A stretch of 64,000 nt of DNA, taken from contig NIVC01002262.1 of NCBI GenBank assembly GCA_002269645.1, forward strand, positions 62,001 through 126,000, in the 5' to 3' direction. A program made the translations under genes and the position numbers. This DNA comes from Macrostomum lignano (lineage: Eukaryota). The notes beneath the pieces are model-generated. The model ran no database searches. It worked only from the letters and a program-made list of their open reading frames with translations, and had not been told where the DNA came from. Shown here one piece after another: positions 1-63,390 of the stretch (position 1 is the first letter of the stretch; the number at the start of each line of letters is the position of its first letter).

Positions 1-293
1 CTAAATTGGTGCTAAACTCTTGTCTAGGACACTAAATTGGTGCTAAACTCTTGTCTAGGACACTAAATTGGTGCTAAACTCTTGTCTAGGACACTAAATT
101 GGTGCTAAACTCTTGTCTAGGACACTAAATTGGTGCTAAACTCTTGTCTAGGACACTAAATTGGTGCCAAACTCTTGTCTAGGACACTAAATTGGTGCTA
201 AACTCTTGTCTAGGACACTAAATTGGTGCCAAACTCTTCTCTAGGACACTAAATTGGTGCTAAAATCTTGTCTAGGACACTAAATTGGTGCTA
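1..293. repeat. 31-bp tandem minisatellite (CTAAATTGGTGCTAAACTCTTGTCTAGGACA), ~9 copies, truncated by window edge
   Basis: Directly visible period-31 repeat; probably in the intron downstream of the ASK-like exon. Confidence 0.95.
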
Positions 294-829
294 AGGTTTT
301 TATTTTTGCTACAAACAATTTTCAGACAAAAAAGCGTTTTAAAAGCGAAACAGGCCTTTTATTACAGAATTAAAAATCGAGCTACATTTTTAACAGATTT
401 CACCAGCTATTATTGTCTATGCCTTGTTTATTTCATAAATAGAAATGCTTTCTTAGTGCTAAATATTATTCTATACAGTTTAAAATGCACAATTCAAATT
501 TTAAAACTTTCAATTCGACAAATTTGGCTTGAAATTTGACCAGCTGGGCAAATTAAAATAGGCTCTAATTGAAATGGCTGCGATAATTATTACCATTGAC
601 AAAGTATAGCATAAAATAAGCATAGAACTATTAAATTATGCGGTTCCATCGTTTATTTTAGCAGTGCTTTTTTATCCATGACTGCAGAATTTAGCTGTCA
701 GCAGCTGTCGAATCAAAAGTTTAAACAAAATGAACCTTACACCTCTAAGAATTCTTTTAGATCACAGGGGTAGGCGAACTTTTTATCCTCAGAGGCAGAT
801 AAATAATTTAGCTCGCGTCTGCGGGCCAG

Positions 830-975
830 ATTAGAGAGGAAGGGAGAAGAAATAGAGGAGAGAGATGAAAAAGAAAGGAGAGGAGAGGCGAGAATGGAGA
901 ATAGATGAGAGATAAATGCTAGGAGAAAAGAGGAGAAAGAGAGGAGAGGAGAGGAGAGGAGGGGAGAGCTGAGAA
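830..975. repeat. AG-rich low-complexity tract
   Basis: GAGAGGAGAG-type degenerate purine tract; explains ORF 737..1015. Confidence 0.8.
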
Positions 976-1125
976 AAGACCCTGAGCGGGCCGAGTAGCT
1001 ATTGTGGAGTTTCAAAGAACCCGAGAGCCGGACAGAGAGGCTTTGTGGGCTAGAGTTCGCCCTCCTCTGTCAAGACTCGCACACACTAAGCCTATAGTCC
1101 AAGACAATTTTTTCAGTTGTCTCAC

Positions 1126-1355
1126 CGCTTGCAGGCTCGCTCAACATCGGCGAACGCCTTCTGACGGGGAGCCGTTGACGTCAATGACGGCGACGCCGGG
1201 GCGGCGGTTCCCAGAGGCGCGGTCTGGTCGACAACACAAACAACGCGGAGTCGCGACGCGGAGCCGCAGCCGCCAGATGTTGAACCGGCAGCTGAGGCGG
1301 CGGCTGCAGCAGCGCCACCGCTCGAGGCAGCCTGCTGGCTGTGCAAGCTTGCGGC
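1126..1355 (-). CDS. 5' exon of an ASK-family MAP3K (MAP3K5/MAP3K15-like); the rest of the gene lies beyond the left window edge
   Basis: Acceptor TTGCAG| at 1356, donor CG|GTGAGA at 1125. Translation ...RLRVVCVVDQ...RQKAFADVERACK resembles the invertebrate ASK N-terminus (recalled as VVCVID...RKRALEEVRQAC). No in-frame ATG in or near the exon. Confidence 0.55.
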
Positions 1356-1492
1356 CTGCAATTTTGCAATAAGTTTAGCTTGTCAAAATCGTTTCTAGCC
1401 TACTTGCAGTAGAGTAGTGGGACATTTCTGGATAATTTTTTGTAAGGGGGCGGCGGCGCTGACGTAAATCGAGGCCAGGCCGCACGCACGCG

Positions 1493-2366
1493 GACCAAGG
1501 ACTACTCAAGCAGAAGGAAGACCTAAGAAGGAAGGCAGACCTGATGTTAATCTTTTGACCAAGGACTACTCAAGCAGAAGGCAGACCTAATGTTAATCTT
1601 TCGATCAAGGACTACTCAAGCAGAAGGAAAACCTAAGAAAGAAGGCAGACCTGATGTTAATCTTTCGATCAAGGACTACTCAAGCAGAAGGAAAACCTAA
1701 GAAAGAAGGCAGACCTGATGTTAATCTTTCGATCAAGGACTACTCAAGCAGAAGGAAGACCTAATGTTAATCTTTTGATCAAGGACTACTCAAGCAGAAG
1801 GAAGACCCAATGTTAATCTTTTGATCAAGGACTACTCAAGCAGAAGGAAGACCCAATGTTAATCTTTTGATCAAGGACTACTCAAGCAGAAGGAAGACCC
1901 AATATTAATCTTTTGACCAAGGACTACTCAAGCAGAAGGAAGGCAGACCTAATGTTAATCTTTTGATCAAGGACTACTCAAGCAGAAGGAAGACCTAATG
2001 TTAATCTTTTGACCAAGGACTACTCAAGCAGAAGGAAGACCTAATGTTAATCTTTTGACCAAGGACTACTCAAGCAGAAGGAAGACCTAAGAAGGAAGGC
2101 AGACTTAATGTTAATCTTTTGACCAAGGACTACTCAAGCAGAAGGAAGACCTAAGAAGGAAGGCAGACTTAATGTTAATCTTTTGACCAAGGACTACTCA
2201 AGCAGAAGGAAGACCTAAGAAGGAAGGCAGACTTAATGTTAATCTTTTGATCAAGGACTACTCAAGCAGAAGGAAGACCCAATGTTAATCTTTTGAACAA
2301 GGACTACTCAAGCAGAAGGAAGACCTAATTTTAATCTTTTGAACAAGGACTACTCAAGCAGAAGGA
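1493..2366. repeat. ~46-bp minisatellite (CAAGGACTACTCAAGCAGAAGGAAGACCTAATGTTAATCTTTTGAC) with longer variant units
   Basis: About 17 units visible between THOC7 and the ASK-like exon. Confidence 0.95.
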
Positions 2367-3019
2367 CAGGGAATGTTTGAGGCTGGTTTTCGCCGAAAAA
2401 TACACTACGGAGATGGAAATTTTCAGCACAAAAAATGTTATTGCTTTGGATAGGAGGCAGACCCAATGCTCATATTTTAATACGTTGTGTCGTTCTTATA
2501 GCTCTATTGATATTCAAAAAAGCTTTTCGTTTAAAACTAGATTCATAAAACCGATGAGCTGAGCTGTGCCATTTTAATGGTGTTTTTAGGCAAGACATAT
2601 GCAATTGTACAGTACATAGAATAAAAAAATTAACACAAAATCCTAATTTTCTAAACAAAAAGCTTTATGAATATCAATAATTCCCGTCTCCTCTGATGCT
2701 ACAGAGCTACAGAGTCCCCATCTGGACAATCATATATGTATGATGACACTTAACTATTGCAAATTAGCAAAACAGAGACCCTCAAGATGGCAACAGAGCA
2801 GGATATTGTTATTGTTCAAATGTTTATTGATAACATTGATAACAAGCCACGTGTTAATGAAACACGCCAAAATGCAATTAGTTTAAACTAGTAAGTCATA
2901 ATAATTGTGGTTAGAAGAGAAAACATGGGCATTTATACTACTAGGATAAGTAAGTAGTTGAGAGGGACATGATTTCTCAGTCTTGCAAGTTTCGCTGTTT
3001 GCCTCAAAACCAAAGACAG

Positions 3020-5148
3020 CTAGCTGCTAGACGCCGAAGGCTTATTCAGCATTACAACATCTTTATCTTCATCATTCGCTGCAGCCTCCTCGGGTTCGAC
3101 TGACGCGTCCGGCGGCTCGACTTCCAAATCGGTCGCGTCGCCGGATTCGCCGCCTTCGTCTTCTTCAAACGCGGCGGCTGACGAGAAATCGCGCAGAGCA
3201 GCTGCCAACAGGCGGCACTGGCGCCGGCGCGCTTCCAGCCTGGCGCCGAGGCGCCGGTCAGTCTGGCGCAAACTGGCTAGTCTGGCGCCCATTTCGGCTA
3301 GGCGAGCTTCACTTGAGGCGCGGTCGGGGTGGCCGAGAATCACGCCGGCCTGGGTGTCGTATTCCTGACGGTTGCGGCGGCACTGCATGGCCGTCTCGAG
3401 CTCCGACTGAGAGTTAAGAATTTTAGTGCGAGGTAAACGGCGTGAGTAGCTGTTCACAGATTCAAATGTGTGGAGCCTCGGCAGCTAATTACTACTCAGT
3501 GAGATTGAGGACAGGGTCTATGGATGGTGTTTAAGGACAGGGTCTATGGATGGTGTTTAAGGACAGGGTCTATGGATGGTGTTTAAGGACAGGGTCTATG
3601 GATGGTGTTTAAGGACAGGGTCTGTGGATGGTGTTTAAGGACAGGGTCTGTGGATGGTGTTTAAGGACAGGGTCTGTGGATGGTGTTTAAGGACAGGGTC
3701 TGTGGATGGTGTTTAAGGACAGGGTCTATGGATGGTGTTTAAGGACAGGGTCTATGGATGGTGTTTAAGGACAGGGTCTATGGATGGTGTTTAAGGACAG
3801 GGTCTATTGATGGTGTTTAAGGACAGGGTCTATGGATGGTGTTTAAGGACAGGGTCTATGGATGGTGTTTAAGGACAGGGTCTGTGGATGGTGTTTAAGG
3901 ACAGGGTCTGTGGATGGTGTTTAAGGACAGGGTCTGTGGATGGTGTTTAAGGACAGGGTCTATGGATGGTGTTTAAGGACAGGGTCTATGGATGGTGTGT
4001 AAGGACAGGGTCTGTGGATGGTGTTTAAGGACAGGGTCTGTGGATGGTGTTTAAGGACAGGGTCTATGGATGGTGTTTAAGGACAGGGTCTATGGATGGT
4101 GTTTAAGGACAGGGTCTATGGATGGTGTTTAAGGACAGGGTCTGTGGATGGTGTTTAAGGACAGGGTCTGTGGATGGTGTTTAAGGACAGGGTCTGTGGA
4201 TGGTGTTTAAGGACAGGGTCTGTGGATGGTGTTTAAGGACAGGGTCTATTGAGGGTGTTTAAGGACAGGGTCTATTGAGGGTGTTTAAAGACAGGGTCTA
4301 TTAAGGGTGTTTAAAGACAGGGTCTATTGAGGGTGTTTAAAGACAGGGTCTATGGATGGTGTTTAAGGACAGGGTCTGTGGATGGTGTTTAAGGACAGGG
4401 TCTATGGATGGTGTTTAAGGACAGGGTCTATGGATGGTGTTTAAGGACAGGGTCTATGGATGGTGCTTAAGGACAGGGTCTATGGATGGTGTTTAAGGAC
4501 AGGGTCTGTGGATGGTGTTTAAGGACAGGGTCTGTGGATGGTGTTTAAGGACAGGGTCTGTGGATGGTGCTTAAGGACAGGGTCTGTGGATGGTGTTTAA
4601 GGACAGGGTCTATGGATGGTGTTTAAGGACAGGGTCTATGGATGGTGTTTAAGGACAGGGTCTGTGGATGGTGTTTAAGGACAGGGTCTATTGAGGGTGT
4701 TTAAGGACAGGGTCTATTGAGGGTGTTTAAGGACAGGGTCAACTGGGGGTGTTTAAGGGCAGTCTTCCGAGAGTGGTAAAAATAAAGGAAAGACACGAAT
4801 AAAGATCTCTCCGACGAGACCCAAGCTCACCTGCAACTGCACAATCCGTGCTTCCGCAGCCTGAATCTCCTCGGCAACCTGGTCGCCCAGAGCCCGATAG
4901 TGCTGCTGCTCGGTCCTGTTCACTTCCTCTGCTCTGGCTGCGCGGCCCATCGCAGCCTCCAGTTGGGCCACGTGAACCAGCAGCTGCTGCAGGGTCTGGC
5001 CGTCTTTGGCCGGGGCGGGGGCGGCCTCCAGCCAGGCTGCCAGCTGCCGCGTAGCGTACTGCAGCTTCTTGTCCTCGCGGCCGGAGTCGCCTTCCACCAA
5101 TAGCCGGCGCTTGATCACCTCTTCCTCTGTGACAGCCAGCAGTGGCAT
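3020..5148 (-). CDS. THOC7: THO complex subunit 7; exons 5148-4831 and 3406-3020 (234 aa)
   Basis: AVTEEEVIKRRLLVEGD and RRNRQEYDTQAGVILGHPDR...LEARRRQ match THOC7 motifs. Phase-0 GT-AG intron 4830-3407 keeps the frame. Confidence 0.9.
3508..4757. repeat. 26-bp minisatellite (GGACAGGGTCTATGGATGGTGTTTAA), ~47 copies, fills the THOC7 intron
   Basis: Direct tandem repeat with A/G variants. Confidence 0.97.
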
Positions 5149-5162
5149 GGTGCATCGTTGCA

Positions 5163-5725
5163 GGCTGGGGTGACTGCATCACTGGAGGCTGGGGGTGACT
5201 GCATCACTGGAGGCTGGGGGTGACTGCATCACTGGAGGCTGGGGGTGGCTGCATCACTGGAGGCTGGGGTGACTGCATCACTGGAGGCTGGGGTGACTGC
5301 ATCACTGGAGGCTGGGGTGGCTGCATCACTGGAGACTAGATGTGACTGCATCTCTGGAGGCTGGGGTGACTGCATCACTGGAGGCTGAGTGTGACTGCAT
5401 CTCTGGAGGCTGGGGTGACTGCACCACTGGAGGCTGGGGGTGACTGCATCTCTGGAGGCTGGGGTGACTGCATCTCTGGAGGCTGGGGGTGACTGCATCT
5501 CTGGAGGCTGGGGGTGACTGCATCTCTGGAGGCTAGGTGTGACTGCATCTCTGGAGGCTGGGTGTGACTGCATCTCTGGAGGCTGGGATGACTGCATCAC
5601 TGGAGGCTGAGTGTGACTGCATCTCTGGAGGCTGGGGTGACTGCATCACTGGAGGCTGGGTCTGACTGTATCTCTGGAGGCTAGGTGTGACTGCATCTCT
5701 GGAGGCTGGGTGTGACTGCATCACT
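5163..5725. repeat. 24-25-bp minisatellite (GACTGCATCACTGGAGGCTGGGGGT) immediately 5' of the THOC7 ATG
   Basis: Direct tandem repeat; the unit resembles the flanking unique sequence TGCATCGTTGCAGGCTGGGGTGAC. Confidence 0.95.
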
Positions 5726-6064
5726 AAATGGTAACAAGAACAAGTCAGCTATCGAGTGTATGCGAAGTGTGACAACAATCAAAACAGAAAAAAAGTAAAT
5801 GCAAAATCAAGTAACTTATCAAAAGTTTTATTAATATATAGAGAATCTATTATTACTGAAAATGAAAGACAATACCGTAGAAGTGCCGCTTACAGGAATA
5901 ACAAACTTCTTCAAGGCTAAGCAAAAACACCCAAGCTGCTAAAATTACGCGCAAAACGCAAACGAAATTGTCGCCTGTTGTTCTTACAAAGAGTAATCAG
6001 CTTAGCGAAGCAAGATATAAAGTAAATAAATAAATTTACTTGTATAGTATAAATAAAAACACAC

Positions 6065-6950
6065 TGCAGCTCCCCCCTCAGGACCCTCAGCACACTGCCG
6101 CTACTCCCCCCTCAGGACCCTCAGCACACTGCCGCTACCCCCCTCTCAGGACCCTCAGCACACTGCCGCTACTCCCTCAGGACCCTCAGCACACTGCCGC
6201 TACTTCCTCAGCACACTGCCGCTACTCCCTCAGGACCCTCAGCACACTGCCGCTACTCCCTCAGGACCCTCAGCACACTGCCGCTACTCCCTCAGGACCC
6301 TCAGCACACTGCCGCTACCCCCTCAGGACCCTCAGCACACTGCCGCTACTCCCCAAGGACCCTCAGCACACTGCCGCTACTCCCTCCTCAGGACCCTCAG
6401 CACACTGCCGCTACTCACCCTCAGGACCCTCAGCACACTGCCGCTACTCCTCCTCAGGACCCTCGGCAACCCGCAAACTGCCGCTACCCCTCCTCAGGAC
6501 CCTCAGCACACTGCCGCTACTCACCCTCAGGACCCTCGGCAAACTGCCGCTACCCCTCCTCAGGACCCTCGGCAAACTGCCGCTACCCCTCCTCAGGACC
6601 CTCAGCACACTGCCGCTACTCCCCATCAGGACCCTCAGCACACAGCTGCTACTCCCCCCCTCAGGACCCTCAGCACACTGTCGCTACTCCCCATCAGGAC
6701 CCTCAGCACACTGCCGCTACCCCCCCTCCCCTCAGGACCCTCAGCACACTTCCGCTACTCCCTCAGCACACTGCCGCTACCCCCCCTCAGGACCCTCAGC
6801 ACACTGCCGCTACCCCCCCTCCCCTCAGGAACCTCAGAACACTGCCGCTACCCCCCCTCCCCTCAGGACCCTCAGCACACTGCCGCTACCCCCCCTCCCC
6901 TCAGGACCCTCAGCACACTGCCGCTACTCCCCCTCAGGACCCTCAGCACA
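6065..6950. repeat. ~30-35-bp minisatellite (CCCTCAGGACCCTCAGCACACTGCCGCTACT) just 3' of the NTAN1 stop
   Basis: Direct tandem repeat; source of ORF 6040..7158. Confidence 0.95.
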
Positions 6951-6969
6951 GACGGTCGGCAGTCCTGGA

Positions 6970-9490
6970 TCATGCAGTCTTCAAGTCGGACTCCGCAGCC
7001 CCAGCTCCGTGCTGCCACAGGCCGCCAGGCAGCGGCCGTTCAACAATGTCTCCCAGATGAAACACCTGCCGAGCCGGCCGCTTGTTAGCTCGGCCGAATC
7101 GCAGCGCCTGGCGCAGGTTGGCAACAAAGTGTGGCGGCTCTTGACGCGGCGAAGTTGACAATTTAGCCAAGGCCGAATCAGGCGCGTCCGCATAAGCGTC
7201 GAATATCTGGCTGCCGCTGTAGTCAAAGGGTCGCAGCACCAGGCAGTGACTGTCTGGATCGTACACCTGAGGCATTGTGCAATAAGTTAGCAATTGGGCT
7301 TCTCAGCACATTCACTGGCAGTTAAAAGTTAGAAGCGAATTTCAGATGAATTCTGAGGCGAATCTCAGATGAATTCTGAGGTGAATTTCAGATGAATTCT
7401 GAGGCAAATTTCAGATGAATTCTGGGGCAAATCTCAGATGAATTCTGAGGCGAATCTCAGATGAATTCTGAGGCAAATCTCAGATGAATTCTGAGGCAAA
7501 TCTCAGATGAATTCTGAGGCAAATCTCAGATGAATTCTGAGGCAAATTTCAGATGAATTCTGGGGCAAATCTCAGATGAATTCTGAGGCGAATCTCAGAT
7601 GAATTCTGAGGCAAATCTCAGATGAATTCTGAGGCAAATCTCAGATGAATTCTGAGGCAAATCTCAGATGAATTCTGAGGCGAATCTCAGATGAATTCTG
7701 AGGCAAATTTCAGATGAATTCTGAGGCAAATCTCAGATGAATTCTGAGGCAAATTTCAGATGAATTCTGAGGCAAATTTCAGATGAATTCTGAGGCAAAT
7801 TTCAGATGAATTCTGAGGCAAATCTCAGATGAATTCTGAGGCAAATCTCAGATGAATTCTGAGGCGAATCTCAGATGAATTCTGAGGCAAATTTCAGATG
7901 AATTCTGAGGCGAATCTCAGATGAATTCTGAGGCGAATCTCAGATGAATTGAGGCGAATTTCAGAAGAATTCCGAGGTGAATTTCAGAAGAATTCCGAGG
8001 TGAATTTCAGAAGAATTCCGAGGTGAATTTCAGAAGAATTTCGAGGTGAATTTCAGAAGAATTCCGAGGTGAATTTCAGAAGAATTTCGAGGTGAATTTC
8101 TAAAGAATTCTGAGGTGAATTTCAGATGAATTCTGAGGCGAATTTCAGAAGAATTCCGAGGCGAATTTCAGAAGAATCCCGAGGTGAATTTCAGAAGAAT
8201 TCTGAGGCGAATTTCAGAAGAATTCCGAGGCGAATTTCAGAAGAATTCTGAGGCGAATTTCAGAAGAATTCTGAGGCGAATTTCAGAAGAATTCCGAGGC
8301 GAATTTCAGAAGAATTCTGAGGCGAATTTCAGAAGAATTCCGAGGTGAATTTCAAAAGAATTCCGAGGTGAATTTCAGAAGAATTCCGAGGTGAATTTCA
8401 GAAGAATTCCGAGGTGAATTTCAGAAGAATTCCGAGGTGAATTTCAGAAGAATTCCGAGGTGAATTTCAGAAGAATTCCGAGGTGAATTTCAGAAGAATT
8501 CCGAGGTGAATTTCAGAAGAATTCCGAGGTGAATTTCAGAAGAATTCCGAGGTGAATTTCAGAAGAATTCCGAGGTGAATTTCAGAAGAATTCCGAGGTG
8601 AATTTCAGAAGAATTCCGAGGTGAATTTCAGAAGAATTCCGAGGTGAATTTCAGAGGAATTCTGAGACGATTTTTTAAACGAACTGAAAATGGATATCCT
8701 CACATTCAAGTAGCAACTATTCAAGGATTTCAGAATAGCTGCTCTCACGACAAACTCTAACAAACAGACGACGCCAAGCCCCAACCAGAGTTCCACTCTG
8801 CCGACAGACCTCAAACACGACTTCCTCGCGGCTCAGAAACCGCAGTCCGCGCAACGCCTGCCAGGGCCCTCGGACAGGCAGCGGCACCTTGGCGGGCGTC
8901 AGCGAGCCATCGGCAACGGACATCACCAGCCCAGTGATCACCGGATACACGAGGTTGTCCGCGCCGCGCCTGGCGCCATTACTCGGCGCCAAGCAGGCGG
9001 TGCGCAACCGGAAGCGAAGCCGGGAGCGACGAAAAGCCTGCAGCAGTTCTTGGGTGAGCGAAGCGGACTCGCCACGGGAGTCGGGGAAGCCGCCGACCAG
9101 GTGCAGGTCCAGTTCGACCGAGCCGCTGCTGCCGGAGCCGCAGAAGCGCTCATCGACAATGAAGACAAGACTGCTGGCGCCGGCGCCATCAAAGTGGCAC
9201 AGCAGGGTGTCGCCCGTGGCCGGATTTCGCACGGCAACCAAATGACAGGTGGTGGCATCGTCCGAGGCCAGCAGCTGGACGGCCGGATCTGTCCGGCGGA
9301 CGAAGGCGCACTCGCGCTGGTGCAGGTAGAGCAGGCCGGCCGGCCCAGCCTGAATCGGCGGCGTCGACACCAAGCGGAGCGCCGATTGGGCAAGCGCCGG
9401 ACAGGACAGGACGGTGGACAGGGCCGACTTAGGACTGGACAGATCCGTGCTGGACAGTGGACGGCTGTTCGAGTCCAGGTAGACAACCAT
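6970..9490 (-). CDS. NTAN1: Protein N-terminal asparagine amidohydrolase; exons 9490-8810 and 7266-6970 (325 aa)
   Basis: LLYLHQRE, SDDATTCHLV, HFDG, LHLVGGF, STSPRQEPPHFV match the NTAN1 family. Phase-0 GT-AG intron 8809-7267. Confidence 0.93.
7337..8670. repeat. 23-bp minisatellite with two homogenised domains (GCAAATCTCAGATGAATTCTGAG then GTGAATTTCAGAAGAATTCCGAG), NTAN1 intron
   Basis: About 57 units, most containing GAATTC. Confidence 0.97.
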
Positions 9491-9659
9491 TTAGCTGCTG
9501 CTGCTGCTGAAGATTTTGAAGATGTTTTTGAAAGATTAGGGATTCTGTTATTGCAATATTTGGGATTCTATTTTTATTTTTCATTTTTGCGCCACGTGTT
9601 CATGAAGTTTATCAAGCATTGTAACACAGAAAAAATTGACCGTCTTTCTCTCGGAGACG

Positions 9660-10385
9660 CCAAGAAGGCCAAGGGGCGCCAAATGAGTGCCAAGGGGCGC
9701 CAAATGAGTGCCAAAGGGGCGCCAAATGAGTGCCAGGGGCGCCAAATGAGTGCCAAGGGGGCGCCAAATGAGTGCCAAAGGGGCGCCAAATGAGTGCCAA
9801 GGGGCGCCAAATGAGTGCCAAGGGGCGCCAAATGAGTGCCAAAGGGGCGCCAAATGAGTGCCAGGGGCGCCAAATGAGTGCCAAGGGGGCGCCAAATGAG
9901 TGCCAAGGGGGCGCCAAATGAGTGCCAAGGGGCGCCAAATGAGTGCCGATGGGGCGCCAAATGAGTGCCAAGGGGGCGCCAAAATGAGTGCCAAGGGGCG
10001 CCAAATGAGTGCCGATAGGGCGCCAAATGAGTGCCAAGGGAGCGCCAAAATGAGTGCCGATGGGCGCCAAATGAGTGCCGATAGGGCGCCAAATAAGTGC
10101 CAAAGGGGCGCCAAAATGAGTGCCAAGGGGCGCCAAAATGAGTGCCGATGGGGCGCCAAATGAGTGCCGATGGGGCGCCAAAATGAGTTCCAAGGAGGCG
10201 CAAAAACGGAGTGCCAAGGGGGCGCCAAAATGAGTGCCAAAGGGGCGCCAAAACGGAGTGCCAAGGGGGGCGCCAAAATGAGTGCCAAAGGGGCGCCAAA
10301 ACGGAATGCCAGGGGTTTCAAATGAGTGCCATGGGGGCGCCAAAACGGAATGCCAGGGGTTTCAAATGAGTGCCAAGGGGCGTCA
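9660..10385. repeat. 21-23-bp minisatellite (GGGGCGCCAAATGAGTGCCAA) between GTF2H5 and NTAN1
   Basis: Direct tandem repeat; source of the LAP/WRP/FGAP ORFs. Confidence 0.95.
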
Positions 10386-10719
10386 AAAAGAGGGCCAGAG
10401 CAAGAGCTAAAAGGGTTGCTGTTCGCGCTAAAACTTGTGTAACTTTTCAGCCTCCCTCTCCTGCCATAACATGTGGCAATGCCTCTGCATCAGGTGTGTC
10501 CGGAGCCCCCTATACAGACTAGGCGCCTCTGTCCCTGCTATTATTCTTTCTAGGCATATATCTAGGTGTATAAGAAATAAGCAGAGTCCAATGGCAAAGG
10601 CATATTTGATCTCTAAATCATTTTTTACACACACCGAAATGCAAATGCAACATTAGAAGCAAATATGAGTACAGAATGAAATCACTTTACAACAGTTTTT
10701 TCATCAATAACAAAGTCAT

Positions 10720-13156
10720 TCATTCATAAACACTCGATGGAGTGTAAGAAATCCGGTCCATCTCGGATGCCAGCTTCTCTTTGATCTTATCAACCATAGC
10801 CGTCTCAACAAACAGGTGCTCCTCATCCAGGTCGGCAACAACAAAGGCTTTGCCAAGCGCGTGAGACTCAGACAAGTGCAACAGGAGTTGCTTCATTGCT
10901 GGGTCACTAAAACAGTGAGAAATTTGACAGTGACTGGTCAAATTTGGTATAGGAAATTACCATACTTTTACTTGCTACATAGCATAAATTTAAAAAAGTA
11001 CTGACTGTCTAATTAGGATCAATTTTTTCATCTATAAGACAATAATTTTATTATATAATAACAATTGGACAAACAAGTTCTTAAATGACAGGCCTAATCT
11101 TAGTCAACAAAACATGCTATGATTTTTGTATTATAACAATGGTATTTAAGCTATTTCTGACATTTTGATTTTGTGCACTTAGTTTTTTCTAAGCTAAATG
11201 CCATTTACTTAATTTCCATATTTTATTTTATTTTATATTTCATATAAAGTATAAAAAATAGATAATTATTAGGATTCTTGCAACTTTAGGACTTCTATAT
11301 AAATTGTTATTTTTGAGCACTCTATAAATATGAAGTCTATAGTTGATGATTTATATGGGTAAGAGAGACTTAACAAAGTAAATTCAAGGGTAGAAATGTT
11401 GCCATTTTATTGTATTTTTGCATTTTTTAACCTATGTGGTCAATAATTAATATTTTTATTTATAATACTATTATATATAAATATAGAAAATTAATACAAT
11501 ATAATAACATAACTTTAATTTTATTTATACTCTTCAATAATTAGATATACTTGCTAAATCTAAACCTGAGCAGCAAAATTAGTATCCAAATAGAAAGTTG
11601 GATATCTCCAATATGTAACTTTTTGGTTGAGGAACCTTGATACATGTACAATTTTTATGATCCTTTAAAGAAGCTCATTTCTACAAAAATGGTAGAATAA
11701 AAAATAATAAAAAAGTGCAAACATTTATCTGTTCACCATTTTTATAGTATTATTTTTGTATATCATTATGTATATAAAATGATACTTTCATTTTTTACAT
11801 ATTTAGGCCAGTGTGAGGATCATGTATCCGTGTATGCCAGACCAAATTTAGGTGTCAAGGACTTTGTATACCAATGTATGCCAAAAACAAAATGTTGCAC
11901 TAAAATGTACCCCAAAAATTCCTAAAAAAGGTAATACAGTTTTCAGTGTTCATGACTAGAGTTTTCTAAGAAAGGCTTTTGTATGAAAAGTGTTTTTAAA
12001 ATATTATAAATATTTTAAATTTAAACAAACTTAAATTATACCTACAAACATATGATGCAAAATTGATACTCTTAGCAAAAATTCACACTAATTTTATTTA
12101 TTGTTAATTTCAAAAGAAGCAAAATTTTATCAATAATGATACGAATCTGTTACTTTACATAAAAATGTAATTTACATTACAATTTTCATGCATGGCATGA
12201 ATTTATTCACCAAAATTTGTACGCCAAAAAAGTATGTGTGGCTATGTTACTTGTGTACGCCAATAGTGTATGCCAACAAAGTTTGCCAGGGGTTGTGTAC
12301 ACCAATTGTGGCCGTTTTGTATGCCAGAAAAGTTCCGGCGTATATGCATACCATCCGCAACTTGGTATTTAGGTTAGCTATTAGTCACTTGGATAAAAGG
12401 CATTAGCAATAAACAAGAAAAGATTGATCATTTCAACAAATTGCTAAATAAATAGAATTAACAAAATAAGGATATAGCTTTAACTTGATTGTCTTAGAAT
12501 ACCTTTCCATGCTTTAAATGGAAAAAAACTATGGTAATTTTTATGTAAAAATATTAAATACAATATATACTTCTATCTCAATAATATCCCTAGAGTTTAT
12601 AGCTAATTTTGGCCATAGACACATTTTTTGCCAGTGACATCAGCACACAAAATTCAAAATTGCATAATAGTGGTTGAAATTTGAAAAAAAACTGGGAAAA
12701 ACCTAGAAATTACAATAAAAGTTAAGTTGCAACCCTCCACAAATGGAATTTTAATGCCAAAACACTTCTAAAATGTTGGCATAATGAAAATATTTATTTT
12801 TGGAAAGTTTCATGTCAATAGCTAAAAAAAATATTTGTACAGTAAATATAATGAACCATTCTGCAGGATAGCCAATAAGTTCCCAATTAGTAAATATAAT
12901 ATTTTCAAGTTACTAATACTAATAACTAGTAGCACTATATTTTTTCAGATTTGCAATATTTTAATAAGACTATATACCATATATTATAATGTGACTCAAT
13001 TCATTCCAGTGTAGCTCAAATTTACATTAAAATTTACAGCTTATAAATAGCATATTTTTTAATCATTGTTAATTGATATTTATTGACATTTGGCTTACTG
13101 TCAGGAATCTATCTTGCTTACCATTTTACTAGAGTTCCTTTAACATAGTTGACCAT
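10720..13156 (-). CDS. GTF2H5: TFIIH subunit p8/TFB5; exons 13156-13122 and 10906-10720 (73 aa)
   Basis: Spliced product MVNYVKGTLVKC|DPAMKQLLLHLSESHALGKAFVVADLDEEHLFV matches GTF2H5 ([21 protein letters not shown]). Phase-2 intron in the Cys codon (TG|GTAAGC ... TTTTAG|T). Confidence 0.93.
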
Positions 13157-13595
13157 GATTTTGCTGATAATATTGTTTATAAAAGGGGAACAAAATCTAA
13201 TGTCAAGCAAAAATATTATTTACAGGAAAAACTTTATGATACTTTTATGAATTAGTTGTTTTCGGTGAAAATAAAAGCGACACTACTAATTTTATTTACT
13301 GTATACCTGAATACTACAACTTCGATAAACACATGGATCTAGTACTATTAATGAATAGGCTACTTAATTTTTACTCAAGCAGTTATCCAACCGACTGGAC
13401 TGGACCAACGGTTTTTTCAGAGCTAATTTTTAAAACTTTCTACTACGAAGACGCATATTTAAAAATTTTTAGCAAGAAAAAACAAAACAGCTACAGAAAT
13501 TCTCGACAAAACTTTTTCTATGTTAAAAAATAAGGAAATTCAATTTTAAATGTTTTTAAAAATTGTTTTCTTTTCTATATTTAGCGTTTTGTAAT

Positions 13596-13607
13596 TTGCC
13601 ATGGCAA
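13596..13607. promoter_or_regulatory. RFX X-box-like palindrome TTGCCATGGCAA in the divergent GTF2H5/CFAP91 promoter
   Basis: Perfect 12-bp palindrome matching the core of GTTGCCATGGCAAC. It is followed by a candidate non-coding CFAP91 exon ending AAG|GTAATC (13684) and an acceptor TTCCAG| at 14707. Confidence 0.55.
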
Positions 13608-14727
13608 TCCATCGCTCCTTATATTCGAATTAGTACAAATTTTTGCTTTGTAAATTAGTTGCTTCGCTCAAGATAAGCACTAAGGTAATCCTATGCTTGC
13701 AGTCATTTAAAACGTTCAAATATTGAGTTTTAAGAAGAGATAAATTGAGTTCGCTTAAAGCAAAATTTATCCAAGTAGTCTTTGTTTTCGGTTGTTTCGC
13801 TTTTTTCAATAAAAACAGTGGAGAAATGATTCCACGTATTTTTGAATATTTTTACCAAAATATTTTTACATGACTAGGTCACTAGGATCGTCTCGTCTCC
13901 ATTAACTTTTTGCTGTTATGTAGGAATTATTTTCAACAGCTTACAATTAAGAAACTTGAAAAAGAAAAACATTGCCATTGTGACAAAAACAAGATATTTT
14001 GTTAGGGCCTGGAGGAGCACGGGTTTCGAGGTCCATAAAGAGCTAGGCGGCTAGCCTTTTTGTGAAAATTCACTGTCATCCTTTTTAAAATTATTTATGC
14101 ATCTTTACATATCAGGATTTTTTAGTTCTGATAGCGCCCTAGAAAGCAAAACAATGCTTGACAGTAAAGCTGCACTTGCATCTGTGAAGTAATTTACGAA
14201 TAGTAATATTTGAGAATTAATTTAATTTTAATTTTAAGAATTCGAAAAATCCGTTTAATTTAAAATATGTGATGAAATGTCACTAGATCACCAATCTGCA
14301 CTCAAAGCAAAGTTGGCTTTCTATTCTACAGGGGCAAAATAAAGCTAGTTAAATATCTAGTTGCTAGTTGCTCTATACCTAGACAATTTGATAACATGAA
14401 TAATTATGCTTTTTGACCAAGTCGTCTTCTGGCATTCATGTTTCTGTGCATCAGCCTGTGATTATAAAAAAATTACAAAGAAATTTTATGGCATTTTGTG
14501 TAAAGTTCTTTTATCTTTAATAAACTGATTGCATGACCTAATTTTAGCTGTCAAGGCCCCAGAATTGAACAGAAGCTGGGGCTGAACTTTAACCCTGTCT
14601 GTTAGTCTGCTTATTAAATTCTCGAGAGCAAGTGTGCATACGCTCGTGCTTGACCTAATTGGCATTTAAACATGATTAATCAATCGGAAACTTAATTGCG
14701 ATTCCAGACTGACTTGTTCGATTGCTG

Positions 14728-20641
<5,914 letters not shown>

Positions 20642-22650: not shown

Positions 22651-23713
22651 TTGGCAATAAAGGAGTTTTTTAAGAGAAATTCCAAAATCCAAATCCTCAC
22701 GGCTAATCTGGCGCTTCAATCAACTTTCTGGCCAAGAGAGAAATCTGCTTTTAAAAGGAGAAAAATAAATGTCGTAACAGAGGCGAATTTTTTGGAAAAC
22801 TGCCGCTGCTGCTGCTGCTGCTGGGGGGGGGGGATATTTTTGACAGACATGAGCAGGCAGCGGGCTCGGATGCCTCCTCTGCAGGGTGGCGCATCGCAAT
22901 GAGGGGGGGGATATTTTCCCCTTGCAATGCCGGGCTGGCCTTATCTTGATGGTGAGTGGGGATGCTGGCATCGGGGATGCATGCAGGATCCCTGCAAGCT
23001 TTGGGCCAGCAGAGCCCCCGGCTGCGGAGAACTCGAGCTCAGAATACCGCTGAGATTTCTGATCTGAGCAGCTGATCTCCGCTCTTCATCAGGCTGAGGG
23101 AGAGAAGGAAGGCAGTGCGCATTGTTATTATTCCCACATCGTGTTGGGAGATTAGCCCAAGAGATTATTGCTGAGCAAACATCTGGATTGGCAAATCTTT
23201 CCTAGAGAAGAAGGCTTATTTAGAGAGTCTGCAAGAGTCGGCCGCATCAGCCGCATTCGGTCAGAAAACAATGGGGGATTCTCGGGTGAAATCGCTCATC
23301 CAGATCCTTAGCTCGAGACCTCCTTGGCTGAGCCGATGCGGGCAGTATAAAACCTGGTTGGAGCCACCCGGGTGAACCGAGTAGTGGAGACTGGCTGGTT
23401 GAAAAGGCCAAATAAAATTGTAAAAAAAAACAACCAACAGAAGCTCTGTTGCTCCATTGGATTAGCCATGGATTGCTGACGTTTATCTGCTAGTGAAATG
23501 GAGCTATTGTTGAGACCAAGGTACCAGCAGATGAAGGCGCAGCTGCGCTACCGCCAGCCATTTCACCGGCTGGCTGGCGTCTTGGGACTTTATGAGGGGC
23601 TGTCATGGATTCTGGAGATTTTTTCAATAGAGAACGAAAACACGACACACAGCGCTTGAATGATTTTTTGAAGATTTAGAGTCAAATTTAGCAAGATTTT
23701 GTTGTGGTCCTGC

Positions 23714-24150
<437 letters not shown>

Positions 24151-24701
24151 AATAGATCTCAAGATGGAATGTAAAACAGTAATCATTTAATAAGTTATAA
24201 TAACGATCAATAAAGTTTGCAAATAGCAACTTTCCCTCAGACTATATTGCCACTCATTACATCAGACCAAGAGCTGAAGTGCGGTGGGAACAGAGGTGTC
24301 AAGCTGTTAGCAAGTACCTGCAATCGACTTTACCAAACAGCCGTAAACTGGTTTAATGCACCGGGCAGTTTGCGCTGACCATGCCAGGCAGTGCAGGAGA
24401 TAAGCGATCTGTTGCTGCCGCCAAGCCCTTCTCTATCACTGACGGATGAATCTGAGCTGGCGAACACGGGGGGGGGGTTCTGCGCGATGGTGAAATATGG
24501 TCAATGTGGGATCACGGCTGCGGCTTGGGGTTCCTGCTGTGTGGCACCACTGCCCGCCAGACAATGCGGCGCGTGTATAGTAAAATAAATGCAATTGCTG
24601 TGCGCCATAAACACTAACGAATGCGCGGCCAGCCATGCAGAGCCGCCCACGGCTGCCTGCTAACTGCGGTGGCGGCTGCGATTCCGATCTGTGCTATCAA
24701 G

Positions 24702-25310
<609 letters not shown>

Positions 25311-26294
25311 ATCTTGCCTACAATATTGACTTTGATAGGCAGGCAGTCCGCAGGGGGTTCAGTACAGTTTTATGGTGTTGCCACCCCAGCTTCATACTGG
25401 CTAATTAGTCTGGGGCTGGAGGCCGAGGCCAAGGCAGGCTCGCACCCTCCCAGACCAGCACAAGCAGTCAGGAGAGTCTGCAACAAAAACTTGTCGAAAG
25501 TGGCGGGGGTTCAGTGGGAAGCGGGAGGGAGGCGCTGCGGGGGCTTCCAAAACAGGTCGGGCTGAACACAAGCGCAGGAGAGAGAAGGAAAGAAAGAAAG
25601 ACAAGAGGCAAAAGAATAATCTTTGCTTTTGCACCTTGCAATTGCGGCCCCTCCAGCGTGGCACCCCTTCTTCTTCCGTGATGTCTGGGCTGCTGAGGGG
25701 GGGGGGGGTTAACAACCACACCGGATTTCAGGGCTTATTTAGGATCCCGAAATTCAACGGGCTGGCCGGTTGGGTTCCCGTGGCAACCTGCTCGGGGAGG
25801 CTGCATTCATCATCATCAGTAGCAGCATCATCTGACTGCCCACTGTGCAGAGGACTGCGTGGGCTGGTTGTGTCTTGGTGGCAGACTCGGTGCATTGTTT
25901 TACCGGGGGGGGGGGTTGTTGGTTCTTCAAACTACCGCAGGATTAATCATTAATTAAACTATAGAAACTGCTTGCTTCGTCAAAAATTGGAACTCGTAAA
26001 AGTTGCTCAGCAGAAATGGAGCAGCGATCAGTGAGCAGACGCTCATTTTACTTGAATTTCAATTTCATATTGAGTGCCTTATTCGGTCAAGCAATTCACA
26101 CATCACCCAGATTCCGGGCGCCTCATCATTAACTGGGAGCGGAGCCAATCGCAGCCGGCCTCTCGAGCCGCAAGCCGCACTCTCCCTCTGCCCCCCTCCC
26201 GAGTGTCCCCCCTCAGCCTCTCCGCCCCATCACCCAGGCTCCCGACCCGACCGACCGCCGCCCGCCACCCCACAAGGTTTTTCGCTTCGGCCGT

Positions 26295-27571: not shown

Positions 27572-36571
<9,000 letters not shown>

Positions 36572-61949: not shown

Positions 61950-63390
61950 CTCTGCCTCTCCCTATGTCCTTTGCATCCTTTGAAACTTCCATCTTCTTTT
62001 CTGTTTCCTATCTTCTCTCTCGTCTTCTCTCTCTCCCCTCTTATCTCTTCTTTCTTCTCTCCTCTCTCGTCTCCTCTCTCGTCTCTTCCCTCTCCCCTCT
62101 ATTCTTTTCTCTCTCTTCTCCTCTCTTCGCTCTGGTCTCTGGTCTCTCATATCTCCTTTCTCCTGTTTTATATTTTCTCATTTCTCTCTGCTCTCTACTC
62201 TCTCTCCCTCTGCTCTCTGCTCTCTCTTCCCTCACCTCTCTTCTCACTCCTTACTTAACTCCCTCTCTTAACACTTTCCTTATCTCTACTCTCTCCTTTT
62301 TCCTCTCTTCTCTCAACTCTTTCCTCTCCTCTCTCGTCCATTTCACCAATTTCCCCTGTCCTCTCGATTCTCTCCCTTCCCCTCCTCTCTCCTCACTCAC
62401 TTCTCATCTCTCCCGTCTCCACCTCTCATCCCTTATTTCTTATCTCTCCTCTTTTCTCTCTACTCTCCCATCTCTCGTCTGTTCACTCTCGTTTCTGCTC
62501 TCTCATCTCCCCTCTCTTATCTGTCATCTTTACTCTCATATGTTCTCTCACCTCTCTCCCCTTGTACTCCTCTCTTTCCCCTTTTTGACTCAGGAGGACT
62601 CGATCCTTTCTTCTTTCTTCTCGTCTCTTCTCTTCTCTCTTCTATACTCTCTCCCTCTCTTGTCTTCTCTCTTCTCTCTCACTCTCCTCTCTCCTCTCTT
62701 ATATTGTCTGTTTACTCTCATCTTTGCTCTCTCATTCCCCTCTCTCTTCTGTCATCTCTACTCTCCTCTCTACTGTGTACTATTTTCTTCCCCTCTTCTG
62801 ACTCCTCTCTTTCCTTACTCCTCTCTTCTCTTCCCTCTTTTATACTCTCTCCCCTCTATTCTCTTTTCTTGTCTCTCCGCACTCTGCTCTCTCTTCCTTC
62901 ATCTCTAATCTCTACTCTACTCTCTCATATTTTCTTTCATCTCACTCATCTCTACAATCTCATCTCTTTCCTCTCTCCTCCTCTTCCCTTTACTCTATCA
63001 TCTCTCCTTTGTCCTCTCTTCTTTCTCAACTCTCTCTCTCTCATCTCTATCTTCTCTCTTCTCACTCGTCTCTCCCCCTCTTATCTCCTCTCCTATATCC
63101 TTTCTAATCCCCCTCTCGATACTCTCATCTCACTCTTCTCTACTCTCCTCTCTCATCGATCCTCTGTCTCATCTCTCCCCTCTTCTCTCTCCATCTTCTC
63201 ACCTTTACTATTTCCTCTCCCTTCTCTCTCCCCTCCTCTCGCTTCTTCATCCCATATTCTCTGCTCTCTCCTCAACCTCCTCGCATGTCTCTCCTGTTAT
63301 CTTCTATCTTTTCTTTTATCCCCTCTCGCCCCTCCTCCCTTTCAAATAGTCTATTCCTTTTCCTTTTCACTCTCATCTGGCCCGTAGCCA
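61950..63390. repeat. CT-rich low-complexity region
   Basis: Degenerate pyrimidine tract; the Leu/Ser-rich ORFs are artefacts. Confidence 0.85.

What the first reader, a model, noticed from the sequence alone, without database searches (positions are those of the whole stretch)
1126..13156. Candidate polycistronic operon GTF2H5 -> NTAN1 -> THOC7 -> ASK-like
Seen: four co-oriented housekeeping-type genes with gaps of only 1.2-1.8 kb, much of it minisatellite. Before NTAN1 a minus-strand AATAAA (9573-9578) lies ~65 nt upstream of an acceptor-like TCTTCAG (9507), 16 nt before the ATG. Before THOC7 an AATAAA (5826-5831) is followed by a U-rich tract, a CTGAC branch point and TTACCATTTAG (5724) ~100 nt later. 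I did not identify upstream donors for these acceptors. Established: poly(A) signal, short U-rich spacer, trans-splice acceptor is the layout of SL-resolved operons, and flatworms trans-splice. Inference: one transcript is cut into monocistrons.
Basis: partly seen in the sequence, partly recalled or inferred. Interest (0 to 1): 0.7.

Follow-up and report, generated by a model that had tools for sequence, protein, structure and literature searches.

The report
Annotated flatworm trans-splicing operon

Summary
The window is Macrostomum lignano assembly Mlig_3_7, contig NIVC01002262.1. Gaps are 1.2-1.8 kb and 52-80% minisatellite.

After removing tandem repeats, the stop-to-acceptor distances are 493, 367 and 793 nt. 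All fall under the published 1-kb operon rule for this species.

Published GenBank locus tags name the transcriptional unit (TU). They place NTAN1 as gene 2 of its TU in all three genomic copies. In the paralogous copy they place NTAN1 and THOC7 in one TU (Mlig017474 g2, g3).

In that paralogue the annotated 5'-partial CDSs of THOC7 and ASK begin exactly after CCGCAG| and TTGCAG|. ASK exon 1 has no in-frame ATG, so the spliced leader, which ends in ATG, supplies the start codon.

- The proposed THOC7 acceptor at 5724 is not supported. The annotated site is 5137|5136.
- In this window copy that AG is missing (CTG, not CAG).
- Whether ASK is co-transcribed or has its own promoter is unresolved.

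No RNA reads could be examined. Verdict: real, a known kind, low novelty.

The parts
13157..14712 (.). Divergent intergenic region between Tfb5 (minus) and CFAP91 (plus); the only candidate site for a promoter of the cluster
   Evidence: CFAP91 is annotated on the opposite strand from 14713. Homology to the paralogous copy L002 covers only 13398-13157. Promoter function is inferred, not shown.
13122..13156 (-). Tfb5/GTF2H5 coding exon 1 (MVNYVKGTLVK + 2 nt), donor GTAAGC at 13121
   Evidence: Joined to exon 2 it gives a 73-aa protein that matches Pfam Tfb5 positions 1-66 of 67. It is absent from the GenBank CDS, which is 58 or 60 aa. It is conserved in all three copies.
10720..10906 (-). Tfb5 coding exon 2 (acceptor TTTTAG at 10912-10907; stop TGA 10722-10720)
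   Evidence: identical to annotated protein P0008
9668..10387 (.). 22-nt-unit minisatellite (about 33 copies) in the Tfb5 3' region
   Evidence: TRF. Its length differs between copies: 647, 699 and 720 nt.
9573..9578 (-). The only sense-strand AATAAA between Tfb5 and NTAN1; probable Tfb5 poly(A) signal, starting 72 nt before the first exon base at 9506
   Evidence: the same 72-nt spacing is found in all three copies. Use as a poly(A) signal is inferred.
9507..9512 (-). CTTCAG, the only match to the published trans-splice acceptor motif YTNCAG in this spacer; the exon would start at 9506, 16 nt before the NTAN1 ATG
   Evidence: motif from PMC8629364. SL addition here is inferred. NTAN1 is 'g2' of its TU. 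The SL-AUG would open a 26-codon out-of-frame uORF.
6970..9490 (-). NTAN1 CDS (exon 1 9490-8810; intron 8809-7267 holding a 23-nt-unit minisatellite at 8674-7335; exon 2 7266-6970)
   Evidence: The spliced protein equals PAA59438.1 exactly. Pfam 3e-59; human NTAN1 structure 6A0E, 9e-42.
6060..6950 (.). 33-nt-unit minisatellite starting 20 nt after the NTAN1 stop (inside the presumed 3'UTR)
   Evidence: 506 to 1063 nt in the three copies
5827..5832 (-). The only sense AATAAA between NTAN1 and THOC7; probable NTAN1 poly(A) signal, followed by a U-rich stretch
   Evidence: Its start lies 696 nt before position 5136, or 121 nt after subtracting the 575-nt minisatellite.
5724..5734 (-).
   Evidence: It gives SL-AUG followed directly by UGA, and a 575-nt leader with 22 AUGs. 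It does not match YTNCAG. CTGAC reads CTCAC in the paralogue.
5151..5725 (.). 25-nt-unit minisatellite; each unit carries CTCCAG (23 consensus-type acceptor look-alikes) and an ATG
5136..5138 (-). Position of the annotated THOC7 5' end. GCT at 5136 is the first codon of the 'partial' GenBank CDS. The preceding bases are CTG in this window, CAG in paralogue L002 and Q (CAG) in the ML2 allele.
   Evidence: SL-AUG joined at 5136 reads in frame MAVTEEEV....
3020..5148 (-). THOC7 CDS (genomic ATG 5148; exon 1 to 4831; intron 4830-3407 with a 26-nt-unit minisatellite at 4762-3508; exon 2 3406-3020)
   Evidence: Pfam 6.5e-26. 230 of the 234 aa equal PAA59437.1 / PAA74526.1.
3050..3055 (-). GTAATG inside the last THOC7 exon; used as a cis donor in gene model UniRef A0A1I8F3E1, which joins THOC7 in frame to ASK exon 1
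   Evidence: P0006 sequence (...DKDV|AASLHS...); coordinates. The evidence behind that model is unknown.
2823..2828 (-). The only sense AATAAA between THOC7 and ASK, starting 192 nt after the THOC7 stop; probable THOC7 poly(A) signal
1496..2366 (.). 46/64-nt-unit minisatellite in the THOC7-ASK spacer
1356..1495 (-). GC-rich unique block just upstream of ASK exon 1. It holds the CRE (TTACGTCA on minus, 1467-1460) and the acceptor TTGCAG (1361-1356). It is either an outron or an internal promoter.
   Evidence: There are no differences from L002 over 1495-1058, while the flanks are about 96% identical. This is weak evidence, because a 403-nt identical run also occurs inside the Tfb5 intron.
1126..1355 (-). 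First coding exon of the ASK-type MAP3K (donor GTGAGA at 1125). It has no in-frame ATG, and an in-frame TGA lies 10 codons upstream of the acceptor.
   Evidence: In L002 the annotated 1457-aa ASK CDS (PF20309, PF13281, PF19039, PF00069) starts at exactly this base.

Best explanation
The region is a spliced-leader (SL) operon of the type already catalogued in Macrostomum lignano.

Proposed mechanism:
- RNA polymerase II starts upstream of Tfb5/GTF2H5, in the region shared with the divergent CFAP91 gene.
- It reads through Tfb5, NTAN1 and THOC7, and possibly into ASK.
- Each upstream cistron is cleaved and polyadenylated after the single AATAAA in its spacer.
- Each downstream cistron is capped by trans-splicing of the 35-nt SL (...TTGCATG) onto an acceptor next to its coding start.
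- For ASK, and for THOC7 in the paralogous copy, the SL's terminal AUG is the start codon.
- For NTAN1 the gene's own AUG, 16 nt downstream, is used.
- The minisatellites are neutral filler that inflates spacers whose repeat-free length is a few hundred nt.

Shown: gene identities and models; species and contig; the same architecture in three genomic copies; repeat-adjusted distances; TU-based locus tags; annotated 5'-partial CDSs that start exactly after AG; absence of a genomic start codon for ASK.

Inferred: actual co-transcription; the promoter position; the poly(A) sites; SL use at 9506.
For: - Species and locus. The window is 100% identical to GCA_002269645.1 contig NIVC01002262.1, and the proteins are M. 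lignano entries.
- Published background. [quoted passage not shown] Repeats inflate operon spacers, and the repeat-adjusted mode is about 100 bp with an operon threshold of 1 kb. The acceptor motif is YTNCAG and the SL ends in ATG (PMC8629364; PMC10468722).
- Distances here. Repeat-adjusted stop-to-acceptor distances are 493, 367 and 793 nt in the window, and 528, 385 and 789 nt in the paralogue. From the AATAAA to the acceptor, minus repeats, the distances are 72, 121 and 602 nt.
- Locus tags. The prefix names the TU and gN names a gene cut out of it by SL and poly(A) read evidence (PMC5730564). NTAN1 is Mlig025121g2, Mlig020674g2 and Mlig017474g2. THOC7 is Mlig017474g3 and g4. So one assembled TU spans NTAN1 and THOC7, and NTAN1 is never first in its TU.
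- Partial CDS starts. In L002 the THOC7 CDS (named 'partial') and the ASK CDS start directly after CCGCAG| and TTGCAG|. The L002 THOC7 protein begins with Ala and no start codon was noted in the few dozen bases inspected upstream. ASK exon 1 has no in-frame ATG in any copy, and a stop lies 10 codons upstream. The SL-AUG is in frame at both sites.
- Chimeric model. An independent gene model (UniRef A0A1I8F3E1) joins THOC7 to ASK exon 1 at that same acceptor. This is what a read-through RNA would produce.
- Signals. Each spacer holds exactly one sense AATAAA. The Tfb5-NTAN1 and THOC7-ASK spacers hold exactly one YTNCAG, at the proposed acceptor.
Against: - No RNA data could be examined: no SL reads, poly(A) reads, 5'-end reads or long reads. 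Everything about transcription comes second-hand from locus-tag semantics and CDS boundaries.
- SL-trimmed reads cannot tell near-identical copies apart, so the evidence may belong to another copy.
- In this window copy the TU seems to be split between NTAN1 (Mlig025121 or Mlig020674) and THOC7 (Mlig017474g4).
- The numbering suggests ASK is not in TU Mlig017474.
- In the window and in L003 the THOC7 site reads CTG|GCT, so there is no AG. The alternative AGs nearby give out-of-frame or instantly terminated SL-AUG ORFs.
- The THOC7-ASK spacer is 602-793 nt without repeats, well off the 100-bp mode. It ends in a GC-rich, CRE-bearing block that is invariant between paralogues.
- About 60% of SL trans-spliced genes in this species are not in operons. 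Trans-splicing alone does not prove polycistrony.
Confidence: 0.65

Rival explanations
1. Hybrid arrangement. Tfb5, NTAN1 and THOC7 form the operon. ASK is transcribed mainly from its own promoter in the GC-rich, CRE-containing block at 1495-1356, and it is still SL trans-spliced at 1355. The roughly 100-nt outron is discarded and the SL supplies the AUG.
For: - The CRE TGACGTAA sits at 1460-1467 in a 50% GC island directly after the minisatellite.
- There are no differences from the paralogue over 1495-1058, while the flanks are about 96% identical.
- The repeat-free distance from the THOC7 AATAAA is 602 nt, against 72 and 121 nt at the other junctions.
- Locus-tag numbering leaves no slot for ASK in TU Mlig017474.
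- Most trans-spliced genes in this species are not operonic.
Against: - The spacer still passes the published <1 kb rule.
- The chimeric model A0A1I8F3E1 links THOC7 to ASK exon 1.
- A 403-nt identical run also occurs inside the Tfb5 intron, so the conservation is not decisive.
- TUs are known to break in repeat-rich spacers.
Confidence: 0.35
2. There is no operon. The four genes are independent and closely packed, each with its own promoter in the unique part of its spacer. SL trans-splicing only trims the outrons. The multi-gene TUs in the annotation are assembly artefacts of read-through or overlapping transcripts.
For: - Each spacer keeps 370-790 nt of unique sequence, which is room for a compact promoter.
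- The TU is split in the window-type copies.
- Motif counts are within chance.
Against: - NTAN1 is g2 in all three copies.
- NTAN1 and THOC7 share a TU prefix.
- Only 72 nt separate the start of the Tfb5 AATAAA from the first NTAN1 exon base.
- The unique NTAN1-THOC7 segment is the least conserved non-coding piece between paralogues, at 94%.
Confidence: 0.15
3. The window copy of the cluster is partly decaying. Its THOC7 has lost the SL acceptor AG and may not give a productive trans-spliced mRNA. On this reading the operon is functional mainly in other copies, and the annotation here is carried over by multi-mapping reads.
For: - The window and L003 read CTG|GCT, against CAG|GCT in L002 and the ML2 allele.
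- The annotated CDS nevertheless starts at the same base in all copies.
- Neighbouring AGs give out-of-frame or AUG-UGA products.
Against: - The window copy keeps an in-frame genomic ATG 12 nt upstream, and its coding sequence is intact.
- A capped or differently spliced mRNA could still use that ATG.
- No expression data were examined.
Confidence: 0.3

Closest known systems
Macrostomum lignano SL trans-splicing operons and transcriptional units (Wudarski et al. 2017, PMC5730564; Ustyantsev & Berezikov 2021, PMC8629364)
   Same: Same species and assembly. Co-oriented conserved genes, a single 35-nt SL ending in ATG, YTNCAG-type acceptors, repeat-inflated spacers with repeat-adjusted length under 1 kb, and TU.gN locus tags already covering these genes.
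   Different: Nothing essential differs. This locus is not individually described in the papers I could read. Tfb5 exon 1 is missing from the deposited CDS. The THOC7 acceptor AG is absent in this copy.
Caenorhabditis elegans SL2-type operons
   Same: One promoter, 3'-end formation of the upstream gene coupled to trans-splicing of the downstream gene, and a poly(A) signal, a short spacer, then an acceptor. The Tfb5-NTAN1 spacer here is 72 nt.
   Different: M. lignano uses one SL for all positions, with no dedicated SL2. The raw spacers are 1.2-1.8 kb because of minisatellites. The SL can donate the start codon. No Ur-element test was possible.
C. elegans hybrid operons with internal promoters
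   Same: A downstream cistron that is trans-spliced yet preceded by a longer spacer with promoter-like sequence. That is the situation suspected for ASK.
   Different: No promoter activity or 5'-end data are available for the pre-ASK block. This is an analogy only.
Flatworm mRNAs that take their AUG from the SL (Schistosoma SL also ends in AUG; noted for Macrostomum in PMC10468722)
   Same: ASK, and THOC7 in the paralogue, have open frames that begin at the acceptor with no genomic ATG.
   Different: SL-AUG use is inferred here from annotation and reading frame, not from protein or ribosome data.

Membership tests
M. lignano SL operon (criteria of Ustyantsev & Berezikov 2021) | Immediately adjacent genes in the same orientation, with no opposite-strand gene between them | tested here: met
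   Tfb5, NTAN1, THOC7 and ASK are all on the minus strand. The annotation lists nothing between them in three copies.
M. lignano SL operon (criteria of Ustyantsev & Berezikov 2021) | Repeat-adjusted intergenic distance below 1000 bp | tested here: met
   493, 367 and 793 nt from stop codon to acceptor after removing TRF arrays; similar values in L002 and L003. The true poly(A)-to-acceptor distances must be shorter.
M. lignano SL operon (criteria of Ustyantsev & Berezikov 2021) | The downstream gene of each pair is SL trans-spliced (SL-containing reads at its 5' end) | tested here: inconclusive
   No reads were available. Indirect evidence is as follows. ASK and THOC7 CDSs in L002 begin exactly after AG and lack a genomic ATG. 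NTAN1 has a single consensus CTTCAG 16 nt before its ATG and is 'g2'. In the window copy the THOC7 AG is absent.
Polycistronic transcription unit (operon in the strict sense) | One promoter and one primary transcript covering all cistrons | not testable with these tools
   Only indirect evidence exists: the shared TU prefix Mlig017474 for NTAN1 (g2) and THOC7 (g3, g4), and the chimeric model THOC7-ASK exon 1.
Polycistronic transcription unit (operon in the strict sense) | A 3'-end formation signal for the upstream cistron lies ahead of the downstream acceptor | tested here: met
   Each spacer has one sense AATAAA, at 9578, 5832 and 2828. Actual cleavage sites were not seen.
C. elegans-type SL2 operon | A dedicated downstream leader (SL2) and a raw intercistronic distance of about 100 nt | tested here: not met
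   A single SL sequence is reported for M. lignano. Raw spacers here are 1.2-1.8 kb. The mechanism is alike but membership is not claimed.

The most novel reading that the evidence does not exclude
The duplicated copies of this operon may be decaying cistron by cistron in a reciprocal way. The window-type copies (two contigs) have lost the AG of the THOC7 trans-splice site while keeping intact NTAN1. The diverged paralogue keeps the THOC7 site, and depends wholly on the SL's AUG there, but carries a 42-bp in-frame deletion that removes the conserved HLVGG core motif of NTAN1. If real at the expression level, operon copies would be kept by complementary loss of single cistrons, and start-codon supply would be switching between genome and SL among recent paralogues.
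Probability: 0.15. Interest if true: 0.45.

Novelty: already known. Interest (0 to 1): 0.2.

Why it matters
The finding has little weight as a discovery. SL operons with repeat-swollen spacers are an established feature of M. lignano, and these genes already carry TU-based locus tags. It does show that the first-stage reader can recognise an SL operon from raw sequence.

It also yields a few practical corrections:
- Tfb5 has an unannotated 35-nt first coding exon, 2.2 kb upstream of the annotated CDS.
- The in-window ASK first exon is missing from this contig's annotated CDS.
- The THOC7 5' end annotated in this copy lacks an AG.

These points matter for anyone choosing promoters for transgenes at this locus. 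A promoter taken from just upstream of NTAN1 or THOC7 would probably be inactive.

Tried and rejected
- Transcript evidence from public read assemblies. Exact and homology look-ups of NTAN1, THOC7 and ASK returned only genome-derived or UniRef entries for M. lignano and no RNA contigs. SL junctions therefore could not be read directly.
- ASK exon 1 peptide search. It gave no hits, probably because of low complexity. A longer ASK exon found only a UniRef MAP3K fragment and distant animals, so the ASK locus tag stayed unknown.
- Locus tags in paper texts and supplements: none found. Gene symbols in the eLife 2016 supplements gave only THOC7 in GO lists.
- Wasik et al. 2015 is not held, so the origin of the chimeric model could not be traced.
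- SL RNA gene or any Rfam family in the window: none.
- Conservation between paralogues as a test for promoters. The copies are too similar (94-100%) to be decisive. The invariant pre-ASK tract is matched by a 403-nt invariant intron run.
- A small cis exon upstream of ASK exon 1 (ATG at about 1425 with a GTAGG donor): considered and rejected by reading the frame in the sequence, because the splice would be out of frame.
- Gene order in other Macrostomum species could not be tested. Genomes of M. cliftonense and M. hystrix exist (PMC10468722) but are not in the collections on hand.

Full report
**Where the window comes from.** A spliced NTAN1 protein built from the minus strand is identical to GenBank PAA59438.1 / PAA74525.1 of Macrostomum lignano. 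The contig that encodes it is GCA_002269645.1 NIVC01002262.1, and it matches window 19490..1 at 100% identity. The window is therefore the published Mlig_3_7 assembly, with window base 1 equal to record base 62001. M. lignano trans-splices one 35-nt leader, CGGTCTCTTACTGCGAAGACTCAATTTATTGCATG. [quoted passage not shown]

**Checking the observation.** All four genes are present on the minus strand:

| Gene | Coordinates | Support |
|---|---|---|
| Tfb5/GTF2H5 | 13156-13122 + 10906-10720 (73 aa) | Pfam 2e-25, covering profile positions 1-66 of 67 |
| NTAN1 | 9490-8810 + 7266-6970 (325 aa) | Pfam 3e-59; human NTAN1 structure 6A0E, 9e-42 |
| THOC7 | 5148-4831 + 3406-3020 (234 aa) | Pfam 6.5e-26 |
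| ASK-type MAP3K, exon 1 | 1355-1126 | first exon of a 1457-aa ASK protein in the paralogue |

The gaps are 1229, 1821 and 1664 nt, of which 720, 1466 and 871 nt are minisatellite.
- AATAAA at 9578-9573.
- CTTCAG with its G at 9507, 16 nt before the ATG.
- CTGAC and TTACCATTTAG, with the G at 5724.
- TGACGTAA at 1460-1467.

On their own the motifs are not beyond chance. Minisatellites fill introns and the rest of the 64-kb window just as densely as the spacers.

**Evidence that this is an SL operon.**

*Distances.* The published operon rule for this species is: same orientation, downstream gene trans-spliced, and repeat-adjusted distance under 1 kb. The authors adopted it because repeats inflate operon spacers whose repeat-free mode is about 100 bp.
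- Stop-to-acceptor distances after removing tandem repeats are 493, 367 and 793 nt here. The other two genomic copies give nearly the same values, although their raw spacers differ by hundreds of bases.
- From the single AATAAA in each spacer to the acceptor, minus repeats, the distances are 72, 121 and 602 nt.

*Locus tags.* GenBank locus tags of this assembly encode the transcript assembly. The prefix names a transcriptional unit (TU); TUs that are at least 95% alike share a prefix. The suffix gN names a gene cut out of the TU by SL and poly(A) read evidence (PMC5730564).
- NTAN1 is g2 in all three copies: Mlig025121g2, Mlig020674g2 and Mlig017474g2.
- THOC7 is Mlig017474g3 in the paralogue and Mlig017474g4 in a window-type copy.
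- Two unrelated genes can share a prefix only if one assembled TU contains both.
- NTAN1 is never the first gene of its TU. The only annotated same-strand gene upstream of it is Tfb5.

*CDS starts at acceptors.* In the paralogous copy L002 (NIVC01001709.1) the deposited THOC7 CDS (named 'partial') and the ASK CDS start exactly after CCGCAG| and TTGCAG|.
- ASK exon 1 has no in-frame ATG in any copy, and an in-frame stop lies 10 codons upstream of the acceptor.
- The L002 THOC7 protein begins with Ala, and I noted no start codon in the few dozen bases upstream that I inspected.
- Joining the SL's terminal ATG at those bases gives in-frame MAASLHSQQ... and MAVTEEEV....
- SL donation of the start codon has been noted for Macrostomum (PMC10468722).

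*Chimeric gene model.* An independent model from the older ML2 assembly (UniRef A0A1I8F3E1) splices a GTAATG donor inside the last THOC7 exon (3055) in frame onto the same ASK acceptor. A read-through precursor would give this. I could not trace what evidence that model rests on.

- *The THOC7 acceptor at 5724 is not supported.* It lies at the start of a 575-nt minisatellite. The resulting leader would carry 22 AUGs, and the SL-AUG would be followed at once by UGA. The array repeats CTCCAG 23 times.
- *The annotated THOC7 5' end is 5136 in every copy.* In the window and in the near-identical contig L003, the bases before it read CTG, not CAG, so there is no acceptor AG. An in-frame genomic ATG lies 12 nt upstream. 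L002 has CAG and no ATG. An ML2 allele has both (MPLQ). SL-trimmed reads begin at the first exon base and cannot tell these copies apart. The annotation in this copy may therefore be borrowed from another copy. The nearest other AGs give out-of-frame or dead-end SL-AUG frames. How the window copy's THOC7 mRNA is made is unexplained.
- *SL addition at 9506 is plausible but inferred.* It is the only YTNCAG in that spacer, and NTAN1 is g2. The SL-AUG there opens a 26-codon out-of-frame uORF, so NTAN1 would rely on its own AUG (AAATGG context).
- *ASK is the weak link for co-transcription.* Its spacer is 602-793 nt without repeats. It ends in a 140-nt GC-rich block with the CRE that shows no difference from the paralogue, while the flanks are about 96% identical. 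The tag numbering leaves no place for ASK in TU Mlig017474. The conservation argument is weak, because a 403-nt invariant run also occurs inside the Tfb5 intron. TUs are also known to break in repeat-rich spacers.
- *The promoter position is untested.* Homology between the window and the L002 copy upstream of the Tfb5 ATG ends after 242 nt, at 13398. Beyond that point L002 carries unrelated tandem-repeat sequence.

**Mechanism and confidence.** The best-supported reading is a Pol II unit that starts upstream of Tfb5. It is resolved by cleavage and polyadenylation after each AATAAA and by SL trans-splicing at 9506, at the THOC7 N-terminal site, and at 1355. The SL supplies the AUG for ASK, and for THOC7 in copies that keep the AG.
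- About 0.65 that at least Tfb5-NTAN1-THOC7 are co-transcribed.
- About 0.45 that all four genes are co-transcribed.
- About 0.35 for a hybrid layout in which ASK has its own promoter.
- About 0.15 for four independent promoters.

The hybrid layout is a sub-case of the first figure, and the reading that the window copy is partly decaying overlaps both, so these numbers do not add to one. No RNA data could be inspected. Public read assemblies in the collections held no M. lignano transcripts.

**Comparison with known systems, and novelty.** The region works like, and by the published criteria belongs to, the M. lignano SL operons of Wudarski et al. 2017 and Ustyantsev & Berezikov 2021. It resembles C. 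elegans operons in principle. It is not an SL2-type operon: there is one SL and the raw spacers are in the kilobase range. The kind is known, and the genes already carry TU-based tags, so I rate it as already known, with interest about 0.2.

The one less ordinary thread is a possible reciprocal decay of duplicated operon copies. The THOC7 acceptor AG is lost in the window-type copies. A 42-bp in-frame deletion removes the conserved HLVGG motif of NTAN1 in the paralogue. This is speculative without expression data.

Noticed in passing
window 13122-13156 (also L002 5822, L003 2176): The deposited Tfb5/GTF2H5 CDS (58 or 60 aa) lacks the first coding exon. A 35-nt exon 2.2 kb upstream, with a GTAAGC donor, restores the conserved N-terminus MVNYVKGTLVKC and a full-length Pfam match.
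   Followed up: yes
window 5136-5148; L003 10001; L002 12850: The THOC7 trans-splice AG is present in the paralogue and in an ML2 allele (CAG). It reads CTG in the window and in the second window-type contig. The annotated 'partial' CDS still starts at the same base in all copies.
   Followed up: partly
L002 10357-10358 (corresponds to window 9134-9093): The paralogous NTAN1 copy has a 42-bp in-frame genomic deletion that removes SSGSVELDLHLVGG. This includes the HLVGG motif conserved with human NTAN1 (PDB 6A0E). That copy may be non-functional.
   Followed up: partly
window 3050-3055 joined to 1355 (UniRef A0A1I8F3E1): A 300-aa gene model from the older ML2 assembly fuses THOC7 in frame to ASK exon 1 through a GTAATG donor inside the last THOC7 exon. 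It then runs into the ASK intron. This looks like a read-through or precursor RNA captured as a gene model.
   Followed up: partly
L004 20148 (about 5 kb beyond window base 1, minus strand); window 1126-1355: On this contig the annotated ASK CDS (1322 aa) starts at an internal ATG in a downstream exon, so the in-window first exon is left out. The paralogue's model (1457 aa) includes it.
   Followed up: partly
window 13398 and upstream; L002 1-5580: Homology between the two paralogous clusters stops 242 nt upstream of the Tfb5 ATG. The paralogue has an unrelated tandem-repeat array there and no CFAP91 within 5.6 kb. Even the two near-identical window-type contigs are only about 93% alike in this upstream region.
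   Followed up: partly
window 14713-19490 (+) and 32929-33990 (+): CFAP91 (PF14738, 4e-58) runs divergently from Tfb5. A GATA zinc-finger exon (PF00320, 9e-16) lies near 33 kb.
   Followed up: no
whole window, e.g. 23713-25314, 28894-30677, 32263-32895, 41697-43677: There are very dense micro- and minisatellite arrays, including perfect (TGAC)n, (TGTC)n, (CTAA)n and (CTAT)n tracts of 0.3-0.6 kb and a 2-kb array of 13-nt units. Repeats in the operon spacers are therefore not special to them.
   Followed up: no
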